A stretch of 62,966 nucleotides of DNA, counting the filler, from Salisapilia sapeloensis CBS 127946 (Eukaryota; Protista; Oomycota), in the NCBI GenBank assembly GCA_023334545.1. It is 9 parts of 9 records of this genome, joined end to end, with 100 filler letters (N's around TTAATTAATTAA, not from the genome) between each part and the next. Parts side by side here need not be neighbours in the genome. Positions count along the whole stretch, not along the records: positions 25,798 to 34,134 come from JAADVB010000494.1; 8 more parts are not named here. The stretch is one strand, 5' to 3'. The notes under the pieces are model-generated. The model was not told where the DNA came from, did not search any database, and was given only the letters and a program-made list of their open reading frames with translations. Position 1 is the first letter of the stretch. Each line of letters opens with the position of its first letter. Positions 25,798-34,234 of this stretch are shown here, piece after piece. A program made the translations under genes and the position numbers.

Positions 25798-26270
25798 CAC
25801 CTAGTTTTCGCTCGAAAGTTGATAGTAGAGACGACTGTGTCCTAGATAAGTTGCTAGATGGAAGATGCAGAAGTGGATTTGGAGCGTTCGGGACTGAAGA
25901 AGGGTTCATTCCTCAAAAGACCCAGAGTTTAGCAGTTGCTCGAACGGTGGAGGAGATTCACCACACGTACCAAGTAGAAGGCAACACGCAAGTGCTAAAC
26001 AGTCGCAGCTTTTTCTTTTACTGGTGTCATGCCGAAAAGCAAAAGCTTGTCGACATCCGAGAGAAATTAAAAGATCAATCCAATGAACAGAAGCATAGAT
26101 ACTGGTCGGAACTGAGGTTAGTCGTCGACCGAGCCATGTGTGAGGACTGCAAGGCTTTTGCGACGTCGTTAGCCACTCACGATAAATGCTGCATTCGGAT
26201 ACAGGATACAGAAGTCCTTAGGGTTTTTCAAGCTGACGGACAAGTAGAGAGTTTTGCGCTGACAAGATAA
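25798..26270 (+). CDS. SsdA-like (BaDTF2/DYW-related) zinc-dependent ssDNA cytosine deaminase domain; C-terminal part of a 5'-truncated gene
   Basis: The frame is open from the contig edge (first full codon 25800). Motifs SGFG...EGF...VEEIHH...FYWCHAEKQ...VVDRAMCEDCKAF..LA...IQDTEVLRVFQADGQVE follow the order I recall for Pseudomonas syringae SsdA (SGWG...EEIGH...HAEKQ...GVSKPMCTDC...VADPKAIRIFKTDGSVE). The HxE and CxxC ligands are intact. Confidence 0.8.
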
Positions 26271-26300
26271 CAAGTACAACAAACTTTATTTCTGGCGATA

Positions 26301-27396
26301 TTAAATTTCTTGAAAGGTCCGCGTCTCAAAGAGATGGAGAGTGAGTGCGGAGAGGAAGGCTGGGAACGAGTCGCAGGCTGTTAGATAAGTGAATACTCGG
26401 TCGTCAATCTGCTTGCTAAAGTCCGTGTCGAGAAGGTGGAGGCTGCCGTCTCTGTCCTTGCGTATCACCAGTTCGTCTTCATTCGGGTTCTCTGCGTACA
26501 TCGATCGAAGGCGTAAGAGTTCACTCCGACTTCCGGTGGTCTGCAGATCCAGCTTGTAACCCATGAGGAAAGCAACAGCTTCTCTGTAGTCTTTTGCTTG
26601 GCGCTGAAAGACCTCTTTAATGCGTTTGTTGAGTATCTGAAGTCCCTCCACACTCTCGTAGTCCGTCTGAGTAGACATCTTTGGAGCTTTGCTCGAGTGT
26701 CGAGAGTCTGTTTCCTTCTTCCGAAAGGCTTCGCTCGTGGGATTGACCTTTAGGTGAAGGATTTTGGTCGTCGCCGTGTTATAGTAGCCTTGTCCAAGTC
26801 GTTTTTCCAGCTCTGCTACTCTGCTTTCGGATCTGGTCAAGTGCTCTTCTAGTTGCTTGGCCTTTTGCTGACTCTCTTCTAGATCTTCCTGGAGACGATA
26901 TACGACTGATGAGTCTTTTGCTTCGTCACTTTGTCGTTGGGAATCAAGACTAGCGACCATGTCTTCTGATGACTTGATTGTGGCTTCAAGCTTGTCTAAG
27001 TGGGTGGCCTCGTCTGAAGTCAGTTTATAAGATAAAGCGAGTGACTGGACATCTTTCGTCAGTTGCTTTAGGGCAGCATGGACTGCTGTATTATTGGTCG
27101 CTTTCTAACAAACTGGTCACAAAGATGATCTGGATTGTACTACCAATACTAAATGACGTACCTCTCCTGATAGGGACGTCTCAATTCGCTGCCTTTTGAT
27201 ACCTGCCGTATTCTGCTTCTTTGGTGTGCGTACTACCTCGTTGCTGTCAGGCGTGGCGAAATCGAATACAGTATAGTCGATTGGATAGCTCACATTGCTT
27301 GTTTTCAGTCTCTAGCTCTTTGACACGACGCTCGAGTACCTTGACGTATTCTGGTGTGGGTTTTGACGCCGCCATCGACTCTTCAATACTCGCCAT
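26301..27396 (-). CDS. MAD1: Short MAD1-like spindle checkpoint protein, 3 exons (27396-27294, 27232-27162, 27104-26301), about 325 aa
   Basis: MAD2-interaction motif TKILHLKVNP, KRIKEVF (RLK-like), and C-terminal domain YREAVAFLMGYKLD...LRLRSMYAE...SFPAFLSALTLHLF. Both introns have GT-AG ends and keep the frame. Confidence 0.85.
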
Positions 27397-27711
27397 TTTT
27401 ATCGTGCTAGTGCAGTCTATCGCAACGACTTTCCTATCCTAGTGCCAATCCCTATACAGATGAAAACCAGATGAGCTACATGAGCACCATGCAACTGCTA
27501 TTGGAGTTATTCGACATACCTCAAAGAATACTGAGCTGAAACTGTACGCGTCGTGTGGAAAAGTAGATAAAGGTAGCTTGCTGACACTCTTGATTGACAA
27601 GCGTGTATTTGGGCGGGAAGAGTGCGCATTTACTCAGGATCACTTGAGAAGAGTAAGACCATACTGAGCGTCAATGTAAAACAGTCTACAAAGGCCTCGT
27701 AAAGTGACAAA

Positions 27712-29260
27712 ATGGATCCGAGGTATCCAGCTCCTAGTCTTATCAGCATCTTGTATGGCTGCCAATGTGGCAAAAAGGCACCTCTAAGCAAGCTATTCTT
27801 TAGCGAAGACCAGCGTGAGGTACTGTGTAGGCGTCCAACGTGCAGTCTACAGGAGTTGGAGTCATACTACTGTCCCCATCGATTGACAAACCTCCCATCG
27901 AAAGAGGCCGAGAGCTATCAGAATAGATCCAGCCGGACCTTTTGCTGCCCAGACTGTGATACCGTACTACAGACTGCGATGCATGATTTGAAGCAAAAGT
28001 ATTTTTTGTTTTGCCCTCACTGTCGATGGGATTCCTTGCAAGTGGATCTGCTGGAAGAAGACCAGGACACGTTACTCATGAGTGCGCTCCTGAGAGAAAG
28101 AGAGAGTGAAAAAGAAGATGTGTTTGAGGTTCTAGAGTCTTATCATTCGTCCGCGATAAATGGTGGAGCTCCCGAGCGTCGCTCTTCCGTCAGAAAATCG
28201 AGCGGAGGTCAGCATCGGTCATCTACGGCTTCCGGTCGACCCTATTCCAAACGAACAAGCAGCGTGGAGCTGAAAAATGGTCCGAGGAGCTCAAACAGCA
28301 GCAAAAGGAGCACCAGATGAGATCGTCTCGGTCGAATCGGATGGAGCAGATGGGTACGTGGAAAGTGGAGGACGCGATGAAAGAAGAACGAGACAAGGAG
28401 GAACGGCTTATCCAAGAGCGAAGTCGGAGTCACTGGCCATCCCTACTCCATTTGCTTACGTCGACTGGATCTTCACCGCCTTTCAACGTCATGGACGACG
28501 TTACTTCAACAGCCAAGCAACACGCCACAGATGAGGTCAGTACGTTGCGACAGAGGCTGACGCATCCTGTCGTCCAGTCATGAGACACGAAGCAGCTATT
28601 GCCTTCCCGACCTCTGTTAAGAGTCAAACGGACGTGGAGAAGGGTAAAAGCAATGGAGAAAGGATCAGCTGGAATACTGGTGAAACCGCAGATCAATCCA
28701 ATGACAGGAGACAGCTCACTGCCTGGTCAGCTGAGTTGGTTTAAGAAAGCGAGTCTCTCCAGTCACCACCTTCCTGTCTTCACATTCAAGCAGCTAACGC
28801 ACCGACGTGATGATAAGGTCATAGAGCTCCGTTTGATGGTGGAAAATCTGACGGACGAAAACGTATAGATGACGATCCGAACGAATGCAAATTGTACGGG
28901 CTCTGAACTTTCGAACGTCGATGAGACTACGCCAATCGTCATTGGAGCTTACGAAGATCCGAATCTCGCCGGATCCTTCAATGCGCAGGACGTCTTGGAA
29001 GCAATAAATGGCATGGCAGTCGGGTCAACTGGTGACTAGGTGGAACTGGAGCTCGAGATAGGCCTATTTGCTAAGCAAGCAGCAAGTTGAGAGCTAATTG
29101 TTGATGTCTTCGATTATAGATACAAGACGACAAAATATTGTCGTATATCTGCTGCAGCCTTGCCGCGGACGCAGAAGAGTTCGAGCAGGACAAGGAGCAA
29201 GTCGTCGACATCTCAGTGATCACGCTTCCAATAGAAATAATTATCCAATTGCAAATGAAG
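27712..29260 (+). pseudogene. DCTN4: Dynactin subunit 4 (p62) pseudogene
   Basis: p62 motifs YYCPxxLxNLPSKEA...CPDC...CPHCRWDS and STLRQRLTHP...LLRVKRTWR...GILVKPQINP. It has a frameshift near the A5 run 28273-28277 and in-frame stops at 28581 (TGA), 28866 (TAG), 29037 (TAG) and 29088 (TGA). The 3' limit is approximate. Confidence 0.8.
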
Positions 29261-29664
29261 TGTGAACAGTACATGTTGCTGAGTCCATTGCTATGCACTA
29301 AAGGATACCTAGGCTTTTGGTAGAACAGGCAAAATATGCACGCTGCTCTGGTTGTTGTACTTGTTCATATATTTTAAAACTCGCATCACGCCTTTGTTTC
29401 CGTGAAGATGCTTTTATTCCAGTGATGATAGTAGATCATCATTTTCAAACTCTTACAATTTAACTAGCATTCGAAAGCTTGATAGATGACTAGAGTGACG
29501 ATACAACGCAACAACTATACTTCAACTCCGACGCATTGATAAAAATTAATCGACTCCAAATGTTCAATGTTGAAAACTGATTCATAAGTAAGAGTTAAAT
29601 ATATTATTGTATACAATGTAGTAAAGTAACGTAACAATTAATAATTCAAAACACAAACATAGAG

Positions 29665-32200
29665 TTGATAAATGGCGTATATTACTCGCAACCTAGCCAT
29701 GCCTCGACTTCTGGATCACATGAAGGGCCGATCCTTTTCTGGATTTGCTGTTTGCGAAGCTCAACGGAAATAAAGTCACTAATGCATGAAATTACCATTG
29801 AGCGACTGTTGAATCAAATTGACGGTGATGTATCTGTGTCAATGGAGCATTTCTTGTACATCACACCTCCACAAGCGTTTGTGCTATCCTCGTCTGGGAC
29901 AAAATCGACTTCCTCTCTAAGATCTAGCGATACTTGACACACTACAGCATCATCTCGATGAAATAATGCTAATGTCCTCGAATCTGCCCTAGTGGCATTA
30001 AAAGGCAAGCATGTCGCTGCCGAATATCCGGTGAGCGTATTAACTTGACAATATGTATGTTTTAAATTGCATTCCCCAAGAAACCCATTGCAGCAAAGGG
30101 GAGTCGGATATACAATCGTGAGTTGATTTAAATCGATTCCCGCCGCAAAGTTGGGAATGGAACGTAGTTTTGGCGTGTGCACGATCAGAAGCGTCTTCAA
30201 TTTGTGTAAAGTATCGAAAGATGGCAGAGTTGTAAGCGAGTCAAACTAAGCAACTGTAAGTGTCCGAAGATTGACAAGTCCATCAAAAGCGGGTAACTTT
30301 TCGAGACGAGGATGTACACCGAGATGAAGAAAGACGAGGCGATGCTTGTTGCTGAAAAAGTTTTCAGGAGTTCGAACCAAATTTGTGCCTTCGACTTTGC
30401 CCTCGATATGCCTGTACTTGAAAGTTTAGCAAAGTAGATTGACAATTTGTAATAAATTCTACGTACAATATTTCAAGGTTGGCAAGCGCATTGGCCCAGT
30501 CAGGTATCTCCATTAGTCCAGTGTACATCAGGTATCTACATGCCATCAAAAATATGTTCGTGAAAGGATGCACAAATAGCTATCTATCTTTACGTACATT
30601 TGCTGCAGATTTGTACAGGCAGCCATCCCTTTTGGCAATTTTTTCACACTTCGATTGACAATTTTAATAATCTGTAAATCTCCCGACTCTGTTAGCGCTT
30701 TTAATGTCTCTGTAGTGTCATTGGGTCGCAGCCATTCTTCATAACTTTTGGGTGCTATTTCAACATCGACGAATCCAAGCAAGGACAGTCCTCAGTCACT
30801 TGCCAGCGATAGGCAAACATGATGCACTCCGGGTACTGCAAGCAGCTTTAGATAATCGTACTGCCTCCATAGGAATAACAACTGCAAGAGCAGCACATGC
30901 TAGGAATAAAACTGCGACTATCCGAGGCACCTCTATCTGTTTACGATTTGTGCTTGCGAGGGCCATCGGTTGGAAACTAGTCTTCGTACTGCTCGCTTCA
31001 TATATCAAAGCCTCCGTAATATTAATGAGATGATAGGATGAAGAAAGGTGCAGAGCTATTTGCACTACAAAGTCTGAAAATCCACGAATGCAAAGGGCAT
31101 TAAAACTGACCAGAAATTGCGTAGTTTGTATGGGGTCCGCTGCTAGCCGAGTTAAACGGCCGTAATAGCCTCGTGGAATAATCTCATTGTTTAAAGTAAG
31201 CATATCAAGATCCAGTACTAATCGAGAGTAGCAAAAGAAGAGGGCAGTCATTGGAAACCCGATGGCAACCATCGAGTCGAAGCTATAATAATTGAACGTG
31301 ATGAGAAGCCAATTTACAATCAAGTCAAAGAGATACGTACACGAGTCCGACTACAGCTTCAGCGAAAGACGATATGCGTCGCCCACACAATATCAGACCA
31401 GCATATGAGATAGAATTACAAAATATTAACGCTCCACAAGCGTACATAAGTTCTAGCTAGCCTGATTCCGTGAGCCGATAGAGCGCTGTGGCCTATAATG
31501 TAATGTCAAACACTTCCTGGCTAATGTTCTAACGAAACACTTTAATCTTCTGCGGCATCGAAACATATACGATGAACATTTAAAACACCAGTGCATACCC
31601 ACTAACGGCGATAATGTCCCTCGTGATCTAAAACATTGTTGACAGGGCGGAGTAGGAATGATGCTTTTCGAAAGAAAGCCTTCTTCCGAACAATTCGATG
31701 CTGCTGCTTAAAGCTCGAGTTGGTTGCACTCCGGAAGATCAGCAACACAAAAACTTTGGCATACAGCAATGTAACCACGACTAGACTGATAACCATCATT
31801 ATAGTATGTCCTAACTCTGGCTTTTCAATTAACCAAAATTCTCCATCGTCATAATTCACTGTACCCGTTAATAAGTTAGCGGTCTCATTCGGATACAGGT
31901 TCAAGGCGATGAGCCACATCACCCAAACGATGGAAATAATGGTAAGAGTTAATAGTGGTGGCCATAGAGTCCGAAGACACCAATGAAAGTAAAGTTTGTT
32001 TGTCGGATGACGATAGTTTGACTCGTTGCATGTTGAGTCATATTCGAATTTGGTCCACGAATTGCCGGTAAAGGTGCAACTGCAGATCGCTTTATGGTGA
32101 AAGAATCATCTTTCGAGTTATCTGTGTCTGCTGGAACATCGGAAGCAGTATGCCCATTTAAAGTCTTTATTCGTTTTGCATCTTCTTCCATCGCCATATT
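29665..32200 (-). pseudogene. Oomycete multi-TM + C-terminal LRR protein pseudogene
   Basis: Family motifs WLIALNLYPNETANLLTGTVNYDDGEFWLI, PECIMFAYRW...CPCLGFVD and LPDWANALANLEILYVE are spread across frames. Frameshifts occur near 31960 and 30835, with in-frame TAGs at 31531-29, 31495-93 and 31459-57. Limits are approximate. Confidence 0.8.
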
Positions 32201-32528
32201 ACCTTCGTCGTAGGTAGCCATGCTGCAATATGTACTACTCGTGTGCAGCGATCCTAGATATTCTATTTGTGCCACGCAAAAATGTTAGAAAGGGTCTAGG
32301 TAGGTAAGGACGAATGAATCAACCTTGCTGTACTTTGCTAGGAATTCGCTGAAACCTGGCGAGATGATTAATCTTGAAAACTTCGATCCTTTCTTGAGCG
32401 TTGCTGAAGTCGATTCAATGAGTTCTCATTACCAGACTATATGATCGCTATTCTGGTGCAGGCTATTTATAGGTCATACAGAGTAGCGCTCGAAAATAGT
32501 ACCAATACAATATATTGTATATTGAATA

Positions 32529-32766
32529 GGGCGTGTCCAACTTGTCAAAATCGCAAAATATAATAAGGTGTCTACTTGCCAAATAATCGGACATAACTCC
32601 TAGAAAATCAGAAGTTTTATCTCGAGCGCAAATGGATCAGTCAGTCTCCAAATAAGATGAAGCACCTCCGGAGGCGGTTTGATTTATTCTGAAAATAAGA
32701 TCAGTAGAGTCGAAAGATAAGAATCTTATTTAAGTGAGGCACTTTTTTGCTAGGTTTGACACCCCC
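32529..32766. mobile_element. Candidate MITE (about 238 bp) with imperfect terminal inverted repeats and TA flanks
   Basis: AATAGGGCGTGTCCAACTT (32525-43) matches the reverse complement of 32752-70 (AATAGGGGGTGTCAAACCT) at 16/19. TA lies immediately outside both GGG/CCC ends, and the interior is AT-rich and non-coding. Confidence 0.4.
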
Positions 32767-34234
32767 TATTGCAATTCTTGGTGTTGGTTCTACAATGAAA
32801 TAGTGCTAGTTATCATGCAAGTTGAAGTAGTAAAGATCTATCCAGTGCTATTTTAATGTTCATTATACATTCACTAGTGCTAAAAGCTTCACACTAGAGC
32901 AAGTGACCAAGGAGTTCGCCAAGTTGGGAAACAACATATAAAGCGTGAAATTTAATCTAATCTTAATAGGCAAAGTATTTAGGTGAAGACATATTCAGGC
33001 ATACGATCTTTACCATGTCCAAGGCTGGCATATCTTCACCCGAAAACATTTCCATCATTTGATTTCAGCGCTACGATATTCAAAGAAAGCTTTGAGTTTC
33101 CAGCTGATGAAAATTCCGTCGCCAGTCGGTTTCACCGTTGTCGATTTTCGACGCCAGGCTGAAGAGAATAGAGTAGGAAGGGTAGCTGGTTGATATCTAT
33201 AACTTTATGATACATGTATGTATGTAAGAGTTGTGGTAAGAAGCATTTTTTGCTTAGGCGATATTACGAGGTAGCCCACCCTGACTCATATTCGAATGAA
33301 TAAATTCAGCGGGGACATTTAGCTTTGAGGTTGAAACAAGTACCATGACACTAATAACGTGATGGTCTATGGTGCTCGAGACGCAAGTAATGATAAGTTA
33401 GCTGAACTACAGAGCTCTCAAAAAGTGTTGGACAGAAGCGAAGCGGACAGAACTTACCTTTGAATTTGAAGAGCAATGGATTCATGACCTGCGGTGACTG
33501 CCATTATGCTTCGCACGAATATTTCAGATTTGAAATACGCGTCCTTTTCGTGGCGACGTAGGCTCTTCAGAGAAGATTTAAAGTCGAAAAACAGGTATTC
33601 ACCGCACTACAGTAAAATGATGTCCTGTGTCTGGTCATGGACTACAGAGCGTGTGTCTTCGATTCGGCAGTAACTCATTTTCGTAATAAAGCCAATTTCA
33701 TGTATTTCCTCCGTCCCTATCAATTTTATCTCTCGTCGACGCGCGGCCTGATTTCACTAATGAATCCTCCCATCCCATCGGCAGAGTCTCAGAAACAGCG
33801 TATACCTTCATTTTGGTGGATCATTCACTCGCCTCCCCGTTACATACCGACATTACTTGCTCGATCTCCTGTGCTCGTACACTGGCACCCTCCAGCTTGC
33901 GACGAGACAAGACACGCTCTGTTTCCAGTCTCAGACGCGTCGTCTCCACCTCAAACTGCAGCTTCTTGCACTCCAAACGGTGCCTCGTTTCCCCCATTCG
34001 CAAACGCTTCCGCTCTTGACTCTCGCCTTCCTCACTGCTTTGAGATTCGCCATGTGTAGAAGAAAGTGGGGCAAGCTCGGCACGCCACGACACTGAACGA
34101 CCATCTGCACGACCACTTAAGAGGTAAGGTACTCNNNNNNNNNNNNNNNNNNNNNNNNNNNNNNNNNNNNNNNNNNNNTTAATTAATTAANNNNNNNNNN
34201 NNNNNNNNNNNNNNNNNNNNNNNNNNNNNNNNNN

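What the first reader, a model, noticed from the sequence alone, without database searches (positions are those of the whole stretch)
25798..26270. SsdA-type ssDNA cytosine deaminase toxin domain in an oomycete nuclear gene
Seen: a 5'-open ORF with SGFG, CHAEKQ, VVDRAMCEDC and RVFQADGQVE in the expected order, with all Zn ligands and the catalytic Glu present. Known: this pattern is that of the P. syringae interbacterial toxin SsdA (BaDTF2, DYW-related), a mutagenic ssDNA deaminase that has been adapted for base editing; the alignment is from memory. Inference: this is a bacterial polymorphic-toxin warhead domesticated by a eukaryote, possibly as a host- or competitor-directed effector, a cell-death/immune executor or an endogenous mutator. 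It has an insert of roughly 15-20 aa after HAEKQ relative to SsdA as I recall it.
Basis: partly seen in the sequence, partly recalled or inferred. Interest (0 to 1): 0.9.

Follow-up and report, generated by a model that had tools for sequence, protein, structure and literature searches.

The report
Conserved oomycete SsdA-like cytosine deaminase gene
The window holds the last two-thirds of an intact oomycete nuclear gene for a zinc cytosine deaminase related to the bacterial toxin SsdA; the family was reported in 2011, looks like a conserved in-house enzyme rather than a secreted weapon, and its target is still unknown.

Summary
Window 25800-26270 (+) is a 5'-cut ORF of 156 codons with SGFG, CHAEKQ, VVDRAMCEDC and RVFQADGQVE in that order. 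It passes Pfam SsdA_C (36.9 bits, cut-off 27). Its C-terminal half matches SsdA in the PDB by sequence. Its AlphaFold model (pLDDT 87.7) has SsdA as best structural match (E 1e-6), followed by plant DYW domains. The H-to-C spacing is 37 residues against 21 in SsdA, so the insert is 16 residues.

About 50 relatives were found. Every named one is an oomycete, from Saprolegnia to Phytophthora and Albugo, mostly one per species, about 200-310 aa, with invariant catalytic residues. None has a signal-peptide-like N-terminus, an accessory domain or a neighbouring immunity gene. That pattern fits an old, vertically inherited intracellular enzyme, not an effector. No close bacterial relative turned up.

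The family is not new. Iyer et al. (2011) reported oomycete DYW-like deaminases as a transfer from bacteria, and UniRef already names these proteins SsdA-like. The window copy is at most 62% identical to any known member, so it comes from an unsampled lineage.

The most likely function is endogenous C-to-U deamination of a single-stranded polynucleotide; the substrate is unknown. Interest is modest.

The parts
25800..26270 (+). C-terminal 156 codons plus stop of the SsdA-like deaminase gene. The 5' end is cut by the edge of the piece; judging by orthologues, about 80-90 N-terminal residues lie outside it.
   Evidence: Translation; Pfam SsdA_C 36.9 bits; homologues to E 1.6e-44; alignment A1 shows the orthologues' N-terminal region has no counterpart in the window; AlphaFold pLDDT 87.7 with Foldseek top hit SsdA.
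25872..25883 (+). SGFG loop (aa 25-28), the counterpart of SsdA's 'SGW motif' Ser300-Gly301-Trp302, which holds the nucleotides 3' of the target cytosine.
   Evidence: Invariant in 58 and 55 sequences. It aligns with the SGWG of 7jtu_A in the profile alignment, though that stretch scores low on its own. The role of the motif in SsdA is from PMC12494967.
25998..26042 (+). NSRSFFFYWCHAEKQ block (aa 67-81). It holds conserved Arg69 and an aromatic run ahead of the catalytic helix, the zinc ligand His77, the catalytic Glu79 and Lys80 (the HxEK signature).
   Evidence: Columns are 93-100% conserved. SsdA reads SHAEKQ at the aligned place. HxEK and a basic residue in the insert before helix 2 are listed as DYW-like synapomorphies by Iyer 2011.
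26043..26120 (+). Remainder of helix 2 plus the family-specific 16-residue insert relative to SsdA (loop and helix aa 95-104, with nearly invariant Trp102).
   Evidence: Spacing His77-Cys114 = 37 against 21 in SsdA. Model helices 78-89 and 95-104. Trp102 is 95% conserved while the rest of the insert is poorly conserved, mean share 0.37.
26121..26150 (+). VVDRAMCEDC (aa 108-117): strand 3 and the start of helix 3, with zinc ligands Cys114 and Cys117. [quoted passage not shown]
   Evidence: HMMER alignment to 7jtu_A and 9c63_A. Cys114, Asp116 and Cys117 are invariant and Arg111 is 98% conserved. The role of Lys364 is from PMC12494967.
26151..26267 (+). Helix 3 and the C-terminal beta-hairpin (strands aa 132-135, 139-143, 149-153), including Asp136 at the end of strand 4.
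   Evidence: Aligned residue by residue to SsdA 127-161 (7jtu_A numbering), E 1e-4. DSSP of the model. 'D at the end of Str-4' is a clade signature in Iyer 2011.
26301..26960 (-). Neighbour: last exon of a MAD1-like mitotic checkpoint gene, convergent with the deaminase gene. Its stop codon lies 30 nt from the deaminase stop. This marks the context as eukaryotic.
   Evidence: Pfam PF05557 MAD, E 2.6e-33, profile positions 559-660 of 661; ORF list; frame reading.
27712..28320 (+). Neighbour: first coding block of a dynactin p62-like gene.
   Evidence: Pfam PF05502 Dynactin_p62, E 6.4e-9, profile positions 1-122.

Best explanation
This is the 3' two-thirds of a mostly single-copy nuclear gene found throughout the oomycetes. 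It encodes a small stand-alone protein, about 200-310 aa in orthologues, whose whole length forms one deaminase-fold unit of the DYW-like / SsdA (BaDTF2-related) clade. Shown: the fold; the zinc site His77/Cys114/Cys117 with catalytic Glu79; the SsdA-type SG-aromatic loop; the basic residue aligned with SsdA's phosphate contact; strong conservation from Saprolegniales to Peronosporales; and the absence of secretion signals, delivery domains, accessory domains and immunity genes. Inferred: the enzyme works inside the oomycete cell. It hydrolytically deaminates cytosine to uracil in a single-stranded polynucleotide that is bent over the active site as in SsdA. The family-specific additions would tune or restrain substrate choice: an N-terminal helical extension, a linker plus helix before the SGFG loop, and a 16-residue helix after HAEKQ. 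A mostly single-copy, slowly evolving gene points to a fixed cellular target, such as a defined RNA or a defined ssDNA situation, rather than an arms-race weapon. Whether the target is RNA or ssDNA is open. The gene was most likely acquired from a bacterial toxin lineage before the oomycete radiation, as Iyer et al. 2011 proposed.
For: Identity: Pfam SsdA_C above its gathering score. The PDB sequence search hits only SsdA significantly. The AlphaFold model of the window fragment has pLDDT 87.7 and pTM 0.84; its Foldseek top three hits are SsdA chains (E 1e-6, TM 0.55, 23-24% identity). Plant DYW domains follow at E 0.0075-0.065, and the next hit is at E 0.37. The full-length P. sojae orthologue folds as one compact unit (pLDDT 90.7, pTM 0.88) and covers SsdA better (TM 0.60 by target length). 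Activity-competent: Ser25, Gly26, Phe27, Gly28, Gln39, Glu79, Gln81, Cys114, Asp116 and Cys117 are invariant, and His77 is 98% conserved, across 55-58 sequences. The window keeps 36 of the 39 columns that are at least 90% conserved. Endogenous rather than secreted: named hits are oomycetes only and mostly one per species. The conserved region starts at a median of residue 14. The most hydrophobic 9-residue stretch in the first 40 residues is mostly at or below 1.5 on the Kyte-Doolittle scale. No other Pfam domain occurs in any member. Native context: MAD1-like and dynactin-like neighbours, and GC/GC3 of 0.46/0.47 against 0.49-0.50/0.52-0.54 for the neighbours. Old acquisition: an exhaustive phmmer search of 1.84 billion representatives gave only 23 hits, and none of those whose source or genomic context was checked looks bacterial. 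A scan of 185,579 bacterial and archaeal genomes found no relative. Literature.
Against: No activity, substrate, expression or localisation data exist for any member in the searchable literature. No C-to-U editing is reported for oomycetes. An unrestrained SsdA-like ssDNA deaminase would be mutagenic to its own cell, and no inhibitor partner is evident. The protein has no separate nucleic-acid-targeting module such as the PPR tracts of plant DYW proteins. Trp of the SGW motif is Phe here. The equivalents of SsdA's key aromatic residues His332 and Tyr334 could not be assigned, because no residue-level structural alignment was available. The window copy lacks its N-terminal third because of the piece's edge, so whether this particular copy is complete is unknown.
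Confidence: 0.6

Rival explanations
1. A secreted or host-translocated toxin or effector: the oomycete delivers the deaminase into plant, animal or microbial cells to mutate or kill them.
For: The nearest characterised relative, SsdA, is a type VI-delivered interbacterial toxin. Many oomycetes are pathogens.
Against: Orthologues show no signal-peptide-like hydrophobic leader, and there is no room for one because the conserved fold begins at about residue 14. They carry no RxLR-type or delivery domain. The gene is mostly single-copy and about 50% identical across saprotrophs, animal pathogens and plant pathogens, which is unlike fast-evolving expanded effector families. The window's own N-terminus is missing, so this copy cannot be checked directly.
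Confidence: 0.05
2. A metabolic deaminase acting on a free base, nucleoside, nucleotide or other small molecule (salvage or secondary metabolism). It would have evolved from a nucleic-acid deaminase scaffold.
For: The gene has a housekeeping-like pattern: mostly single copy, slow evolution and no nucleic-acid-targeting module. The deaminase superfamily has switched between free-nucleotide and polynucleotide substrates (Iyer 2011).
Against: All significant structural and sequence neighbours act on polynucleotides: SsdA on ssDNA and DYW domains on RNA. Nucleotide and tRNA deaminases appear only at E above 0.5. The SG-aromatic loop and Arg111, which aligns with SsdA Lys364, contact flanking nucleotides and phosphates in SsdA, and both are conserved.
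Confidence: 0.15
3. A catalytically dead relic or pseudoenzyme kept for a structural or binding role.
For: No activity has ever been shown. Some eukaryotic deaminase-fold proteins are inactive (Iyer 2011 Table 1).
Against: His, Glu and both Cys are invariant or nearly so in 55-58 sequences that are otherwise only about 28-29% identical per column on average. The ORF has no stop or frameshift.
Confidence: 0.05
4. Bacterial contamination or a chimeric contig start.
For: The gene sits at the very edge of the piece and its best characterised relative is bacterial.
Against: Its stop codon is 30 nt from a MAD1-like gene on the same DNA. Its composition matches the neighbours. Orthologues lie on megabase oomycete scaffolds, for example 13.4 Mb in P. 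sojae and 5.1 Mb in P. infestans, next to eukaryotic genes. No bacterial genome encodes a near relative.
Confidence: 0.01

Closest known systems
SsdA of Pseudomonas syringae (BaDTF2; PDB 7JTU, 9C63, 9C64)
   Same: It is the best structural and sequence match. Both have the C-terminal-hairpin deaminase fold and the HAEKQ catalytic helix. Both have an MCxDC zinc motif with the same 39-40 residues from the second Cys to the C-terminus. Both have an SG-aromatic-G loop, a basic residue three positions before the first zinc Cys, and Asp at the end of strand 4.
   Different: Identity is only 23-24%. The protein is eukaryotic and stands alone, with no T6SS or PAAR-type delivery region and no SsdAI-type immunity neighbour. 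Trp302 is replaced by Phe. There are three insertions: a linker plus helix before SGFG, about 6 residues before HAE, and 16 residues after HAEKQ. There is also a conserved N-terminal helical extension of about 50 residues. Its substrate is unknown.
[quoted passage not shown] PITG_03529, PHYSODRAFT_471773, SPRG_03691, AlNc14C37G3265)
   Same: This is the same orthologous family. Identity over the shared region is 42-65%, the motifs are the same and the conserved columns are shared.
   Different: The window copy is no closer than 62% to any member (52% to Albugo laibachii). In a neighbour-joining tree it branches at the base of the Peronosporales/Pythiales group, so it comes from a lineage not represented in the protein collections. 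I could not confirm from the 2011 paper's main text which P. infestans gene it used.
Plant and protist PPR-DYW RNA-editing deaminase domains (Pfam PF14432; PDB 7O4E/F, 7W86, 9KFX)
   Same: They belong to the same clade of the deaminase superfamily, share the HxE(K) and CxxC core, and are the second-best structural matches.
   Different: The window protein has no PF14432 hit, no C-terminal DYW tripeptide, no second metal site (His pair plus C-terminal CxC), and no PPR or other targeting repeats. Foldseek E-values are 3-4 orders of magnitude weaker than for SsdA.

Membership tests
Pfam PF24120 SsdA_C | Whole-protein score at or above the curated gathering score (27 bits) | tested here: met
   36.9 bits, E 5.6e-9, aa 23-82 on profile positions 2-55 of 56. 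Orthologues score 31-51 bits.
DYW-like clade of the deaminase superfamily (Iyer et al. 2011, Table 1) | HxEK motif in helix 2 and CxxC at helix 3 (zinc site plus catalytic Glu) | tested here: met
   H77-A-E79-K80 and C114-E-D-C117. These are invariant or nearly invariant in the family. The definition is quoted.
DYW-like clade of the deaminase superfamily (Iyer et al. 2011, Table 1) | [quoted passage not shown] | tested here: met
   The loop at aa 53-77 in the model holds Arg69, which is 96% conserved. The residue-to-residue match to SsdA Arg336 could not be verified.
DYW-like clade of the deaminase superfamily (Iyer et al. 2011, Table 1) | Asp at the end of strand 4 | tested here: met
   Asp136 follows model strand 132-135, aligns with the Asp of SsdA in the HMMER alignment, and is 93% conserved.
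DYW-like clade of the deaminase superfamily (Iyer et al. 2011, Table 1) | [quoted passage not shown] | tested here: inconclusive
   This part lies outside the piece. Orthologues have a conserved Lys/Arg just before their first strand (P. sojae strand 62-67).
BaDTF2 (bacterial deaminase toxin family 2, de Moraes et al. 2021) | Bacterial polymorphic toxin: deaminase at the C-terminus of a protein with delivery or secretion modules | tested here: not met
   The context and all named homologues are eukaryotic. Full-length orthologues are about 200-310 aa with no other domain. The window's own N-terminus is cut.
BaDTF2 (bacterial deaminase toxin family 2, de Moraes et al. 2021) | Adjacent cognate immunity gene (SsdAI / Imm5-type) | tested here: not met
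   The downstream neighbour is a MAD1-like gene. In P. infestans and locus L003 the upstream neighbour is lysine-ketoglutarate reductase/saccharopine dehydrogenase.
BaDTF2 (bacterial deaminase toxin family 2, de Moraes et al. 2021) | Highly conserved SGW motif (Ser300-Gly301-Trp302 in SsdA) | tested here: inconclusive
   The window and all 55-58 relatives have S-G-F: Ser and Gly are kept, and the aromatic residue is kept but as Phe, not Trp. The motif is defined in PMC12494967.
BaDTF2 (bacterial deaminase toxin family 2, de Moraes et al. 2021) | ssDNA-specific cytosine deaminase activity | not testable with these tools
   No activity data for any oomycete member were found.
Classical DYW domain (Pfam PF14432, PPR-DYW editing factors) | PF14432 match, C-terminal DYW tripeptide, second metal site (two His plus C-terminal CxC), and an upstream PPR tract | tested here: not met
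   The window has no PF14432 hit at E up to 1. The C-terminus ends ...SFALTR with no conserved CxC. Orthologues have no PPR.
Oomycete secreted or translocated effectors (signal peptide with or without RxLR or CRN motifs) | N-terminal signal peptide followed by a translocation motif | tested here: not met
   This was tested on orthologues only, because the window is cut. The conserved fold begins at a median of residue 14, and the maximal 9-residue hydropathy in the first 40 residues is mostly at or below 1.5. This was a simple scan, not a trained predictor.

The most novel reading that the evidence does not exclude
Oomycetes may possess a so far unrecognised, lineage-wide programmed C-to-U editing activity carried out by this stand-alone SsdA-like enzyme. 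It could act on a defined RNA or on transiently single-stranded DNA. Substrate choice would be built into the family-specific N-terminal extension and inserts rather than into separate targeting repeats. Divergent relatives on eukaryote-like metagenome contigs (L002, L004) hint that the system may extend beyond the sampled oomycetes.
Probability: 0.3. Interest if true: 0.65.

Novelty: new member of a known kind. Interest (0 to 1): 0.3.

Why it matters
The SsdA/DYW clade supplies both plant organellar RNA editors and compact base-editing enzymes. A mostly single-copy member conserved across a whole group of major crop and animal pathogens therefore probably has a real cellular role. That role has gone unstudied for 15 years after its in-silico discovery. 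Finding its substrate would show whether a toxin-derived deaminase became an RNA editor or a DNA-level enzyme a further independent time in eukaryotes. The window itself adds only one more orthologue, from an unsampled lineage.

Tried and rejected
(1) Exact look-up of the window's partial protein in public assemblies found nothing on record.

(2) The organism could not be named. A search with the MAD1-like ORF returned only a 34% identical fish fragment, because of the length filter. Albugo was my guess from GC content and tree position, but the A. laibachii orthologue is only 52% identical, so I rejected it.

(3) Synteny with P. infestans downstream of the gene is absent. Upstream synteny (LKR/SDH) exists between two other oomycete loci but cannot be checked in the cut window.

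(4) A sequence-only alignment of the N-terminal half (aa 16-100) to PDB chains gave no hit at E up to 10. As a result, the equivalents of SsdA His332, Tyr334 and Arg336 could not be mapped. Foldseek output gives no residue alignment.

(5) A scan of bacterial and archaeal genomes for the WCHAEKQ block gave 42 pattern matches but no confirmed relative. The metagenome scan gave one locus at 33% identity.

(6) The search for accessory-domain fusions as functional hints found none. The 810-aa Pythium insidiosum protein with an alpha/beta-hydrolase is probably a merged gene model.

(7) NCBIfam gave no meaningful hit.

(8) The intron in the P. infestans gene model cannot serve as evidence of eukaryotic gene structure. 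It is in frame inside the variable linker, so it is weak evidence.

(9) Scans for tRNA genes, tandem repeats and Rfam families found nothing in the piece.

(10) Literature searches for locus tags, oomycete C-to-U editing, and DYW-like or SsdA-like oomycete work returned only Iyer et al. 2011.

Full report
**1. What is in the sequence**

The piece is window 25798-34134. It has no N, and GC runs from 0.36 to 0.52. From 25800 the + strand reads 156 codons without a stop, ending at TAA 26268-26270. The frame is open to the left edge, so the gene is cut by the edge of the piece, not broken.

- SGFG, aa 25-28
- CHAEKQ, aa 76-81
- VVDRAMCEDC, aa 108-117
- RVFQADGQVE, aa 141-150

**2. Is it an SsdA-type deaminase?**

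Yes, by four independent lines of evidence.

- The N-terminal half (aa 23-82) matches Pfam PF24120 SsdA_C at 36.9 bits, above the curated cut-off of 27.
- The C-terminal half (aa 107-152) matches the SsdA chains 7jtu_A and 9c63_A by plain phmmer, E 1e-4. The MCxDC motif, the Asp after strand 4 and the final hairpin all line up. A family profile improves this to E 6e-6 and also picks up plant DYW structures weakly (7w86 at E 0.028, 7o4e at E 0.19).
- An AlphaFold model of the window fragment, built on 58 sequences, is confident (pLDDT 87.7, pTM 0.84). Its three best Foldseek matches in the PDB are SsdA chains (E 1e-6 to 9e-6, TM 0.55, 23-24% identity). Plant DYW domains follow at E 0.0075-0.065, and the next hit is at E 0.37.
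- A divergent family member aligns its CHAEKQ directly on SsdA's SHAEKQ.

That did not occur. ADAT2 and T4 dCMP deaminase appear only at E above 0.5.

**3. Anatomy relative to SsdA**

The SsdA-ssDNA structure paper gives these residues (PMC12494967):
- zinc ligands His346, Cys367 and Cys370
- catalytic Glu348
- the 'SGW motif' Ser300-Gly301-Trp302, which holds the +1 and +2 nucleotides
- an aromatic cluster (His332, Tyr334, Tyr342, Phe343) ahead of the catalytic helix

The window compares as follows:
- His77, Glu79, Cys114 and Cys117 are present.
- The loop reads S-G-F, with Phe in place of Trp.
- Arg111 aligns with Lys364.
- An aromatic run (Phe71-Trp75) lies just before His77.

The spacings are:

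| Interval | Window | SsdA | Difference |
|---|---|---|---|
| Ser to His | 52 | 46 | +6 |
| His to first Cys | 37 | 21 | +16 |
| Second Cys to C-terminus | 39 | 40 | -1 |

In the model it is a loop plus helix 95-104 and contains a 95% conserved Trp102.

The full-length P. sojae orthologue folds as one compact unit (pLDDT 90.7, pTM 0.88). It has N-terminal helices (14-46), a first beta-strand (62-67), a variable linker and a helix before the SGFG loop. It covers SsdA slightly better than the fragment does (TM 0.60 by target length). The window therefore lacks about 80-90 residues, including the first strand of the fold. I have not tried to supply them.

**4. Relatives and distribution**

The word-indexed search found 47 homologues, E 1.6e-44 to 2e-20, of 150-271 aa. 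A profile search added more, including Albugo laibachii AlNc14C37G3265.

Every named hit is an oomycete. The genera include Phytophthora, Nothophytophthora, Peronospora, Bremia, Plasmopara, Globisporangium, Pythium, Lagenidium, Albugo, Achlya, Saprolegnia and Aphanomyces. Nearly every species appears once; P. cactorum and P. capsici appear twice, the second entries being a shorter model and a low-coverage hit.

The exhaustive phmmer run over 1.84 billion cluster representatives found only 23 proteins at E up to 0.001. The family is therefore narrow. None of the hits whose source or genomic context was checked looks bacterial.

A pattern scan of 185,579 bacterial and archaeal genomes found no relative.

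A few unnamed divergent members sit on contigs with eukaryote-type neighbours:
- P0060 is next to a CYFIP/FragX_IP gene.
- P0069 is next to a cyclic-nucleotide-binding ion channel gene.

The family may therefore reach somewhat beyond the sampled oomycetes.

Conservation is strong. Ten columns are invariant and about 30 more are at least 90% conserved in 55-58 sequences, whose mean column identity is only 28-29%. The window copy keeps 36 of the 39 columns that are at least 90% conserved; the three departures are Ile for Leu, Gln for Leu and Thr for Pro.

No member has an additional Pfam domain.

**5. Context and origin of the window**

Thirty nucleotides after the stop, the other strand carries the end of a MAD1-like gene (PF05557, E 2.6e-33). 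A dynactin p62-like gene follows (PF05502, E 6.4e-9).

GC and GC3 of the deaminase ORF are 0.46 and 0.47. The neighbours have 0.49-0.50 and 0.52-0.54, so the values are close. Contamination or a chimera is therefore very unlikely.

The organism is not identified. The best identity is 62% (P. sojae), and Albugo laibachii is only 52%. In a neighbour-joining tree the window branches after the Saprolegniales, at the base of the Peronosporales/Pythiales assemblage. 'Oomycete' is well supported; the lineage appears unsampled in the protein collections.

**6. How it most likely works**

Shown:
- an intact zinc deaminase active site of the SsdA type
- conserved counterparts of SsdA residues that hold the flanking nucleotides and the phosphate
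- a stand-alone, mostly single-copy, slowly evolving gene
- no hydrophobic leader in orthologues: the conserved fold starts at a median of residue 14, and maximal 9-residue hydropathy is mostly at or below 1.5

Inferred:
- The protein acts inside the oomycete cell and converts cytosine to uracil in a single-stranded polynucleotide.
- The family-specific extension and inserts shape or limit substrate access.

The conservation pattern favours a fixed endogenous target over an arms-race role. I cannot decide between RNA and ssDNA. SsdA prefers ssDNA, while the plant relatives edit RNA.

Rival explanations:

| Rival | Confidence | Main argument against |
|---|---|---|
| Secreted effector | about 0.05 | no leader, no expansion, same gene in saprotrophs and pathogens |
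| Small-molecule or nucleotide deaminase | about 0.15 | conserved polynucleotide-contact residues and polynucleotide-acting neighbours; not excluded |
| Pseudoenzyme | about 0.05 | invariant catalytic residues |
| Contamination or chimera | about 0.01 | eukaryotic neighbours 30 nt away and matching composition |

**7. Comparison with what is known, and novelty**

Iyer, Zhang, Rogozin and Aravind (2011) listed oomycetes in the phyletic range of the 'DYW-like' clade. [quoted passage not shown]

De Moraes et al. (2021) renamed the bacterial toxin members BaDTF2. UniRef now names the oomycete proteins after Pfam SsdA_C.

I found no paper with functional data on any oomycete member.

The window protein passes the membership tests for PF24120. 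It also passes those for the DYW-like clade, except for one feature that lies outside the piece. It fails the defining contextual features of BaDTF2 (bacterial host, delivery modules, immunity neighbour) and those of classical DYW domains (PF14432, DYW tail, second metal site, PPR).

The finding is a new member, from an unsampled lineage, of a kind already described in silico.

**8. Verdict**

Interest is modest (0.3). The identification is right but not new, and the exciting effector reading is the least supported one.

The open and testable question is what a toxin-derived, pan-oomycete cytosine deaminase does in its own cell.

The gene is described as it stands, cut at the edge of the piece.

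Noticed in passing
window 26271-27400 (-): A MAD1-like checkpoint gene is convergent with the deaminase gene, with only 30 nt between the two stop codons, so the 3' UTRs must overlap or be minimal. Its earlier coding blocks lie in other frames up to about 27400, which suggests a short (roughly 330-350 aa) multi-exon MAD1.
   Followed up: partly
window 27712-29036 (+): The dynactin p62-like gene continues past 28320 in other frames, through a Ser/Arg/Lys-rich low-complexity stretch. These may be introns or frame changes; I did not model them.
   Followed up: no
window 29817-32284 (-): A string of ORF pieces in three frames has leucine-rich-repeat-like and hydrophobic segments but no Pfam hit at E up to 0.01. 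It could be a multi-intron LRR membrane-protein gene or a decayed one. Next to it, 29300-29800 is an AT-rich dip (GC 0.36).
   Followed up: partly
window 33548-34134: The right end of the piece has higher GC (0.49) and strongly negative GC skew (-0.24). Overlapping ORFs of 60-140 aa on both strands have no family match.
   Followed up: no
L001:4490-8756 and L003:4478-8921: In P. infestans and in an unnamed oomycete Logan contig, the deaminase gene is divergently paired with the bifunctional lysine-ketoglutarate reductase/saccharopine dehydrogenase gene. This is conserved micro-synteny. It cannot be checked in the window because the piece ends inside the deaminase gene.
   Followed up: partly
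L001:8001-8756: The P. infestans model PITG_03529 gives 225 aa, but tblastn runs uninterrupted over 251 codons. The annotated intron is therefore in frame and falls in the family's variable linker, so the gene model may be wrong.
   Followed up: partly
L002:6001-7722 (P0069) and L004:973-1701 (P0060): Divergent family members (34-40% identity) lie on metagenome contigs with eukaryote-type neighbours: a cNMP-binding ion channel and a sulfatase for P0069, and CYFIP/FragX_IP for P0060. The organisms are unknown and may not be classical oomycetes. P0069 is 573 aa and has no recognisable extra domain.
   Followed up: partly
P0055 (Pythium insidiosum KAJ0394092.1, 810 aa): The SsdA_C region is joined to a C-terminal alpha/beta-hydrolase domain. 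It is the only such architecture seen, so it is probably a merged gene model rather than a true fusion.
   Followed up: no
window 25962-25964 and 26025-26027 (His55, Cys76): Two further residues, His55 (98% conserved) and Cys76 (96%), are nearly invariant in the family but are not zinc ligands of the catalytic site. SsdA has Ser where the window has Cys76. Whether they form an extra metal or redox site is unknown.
   Followed up: no
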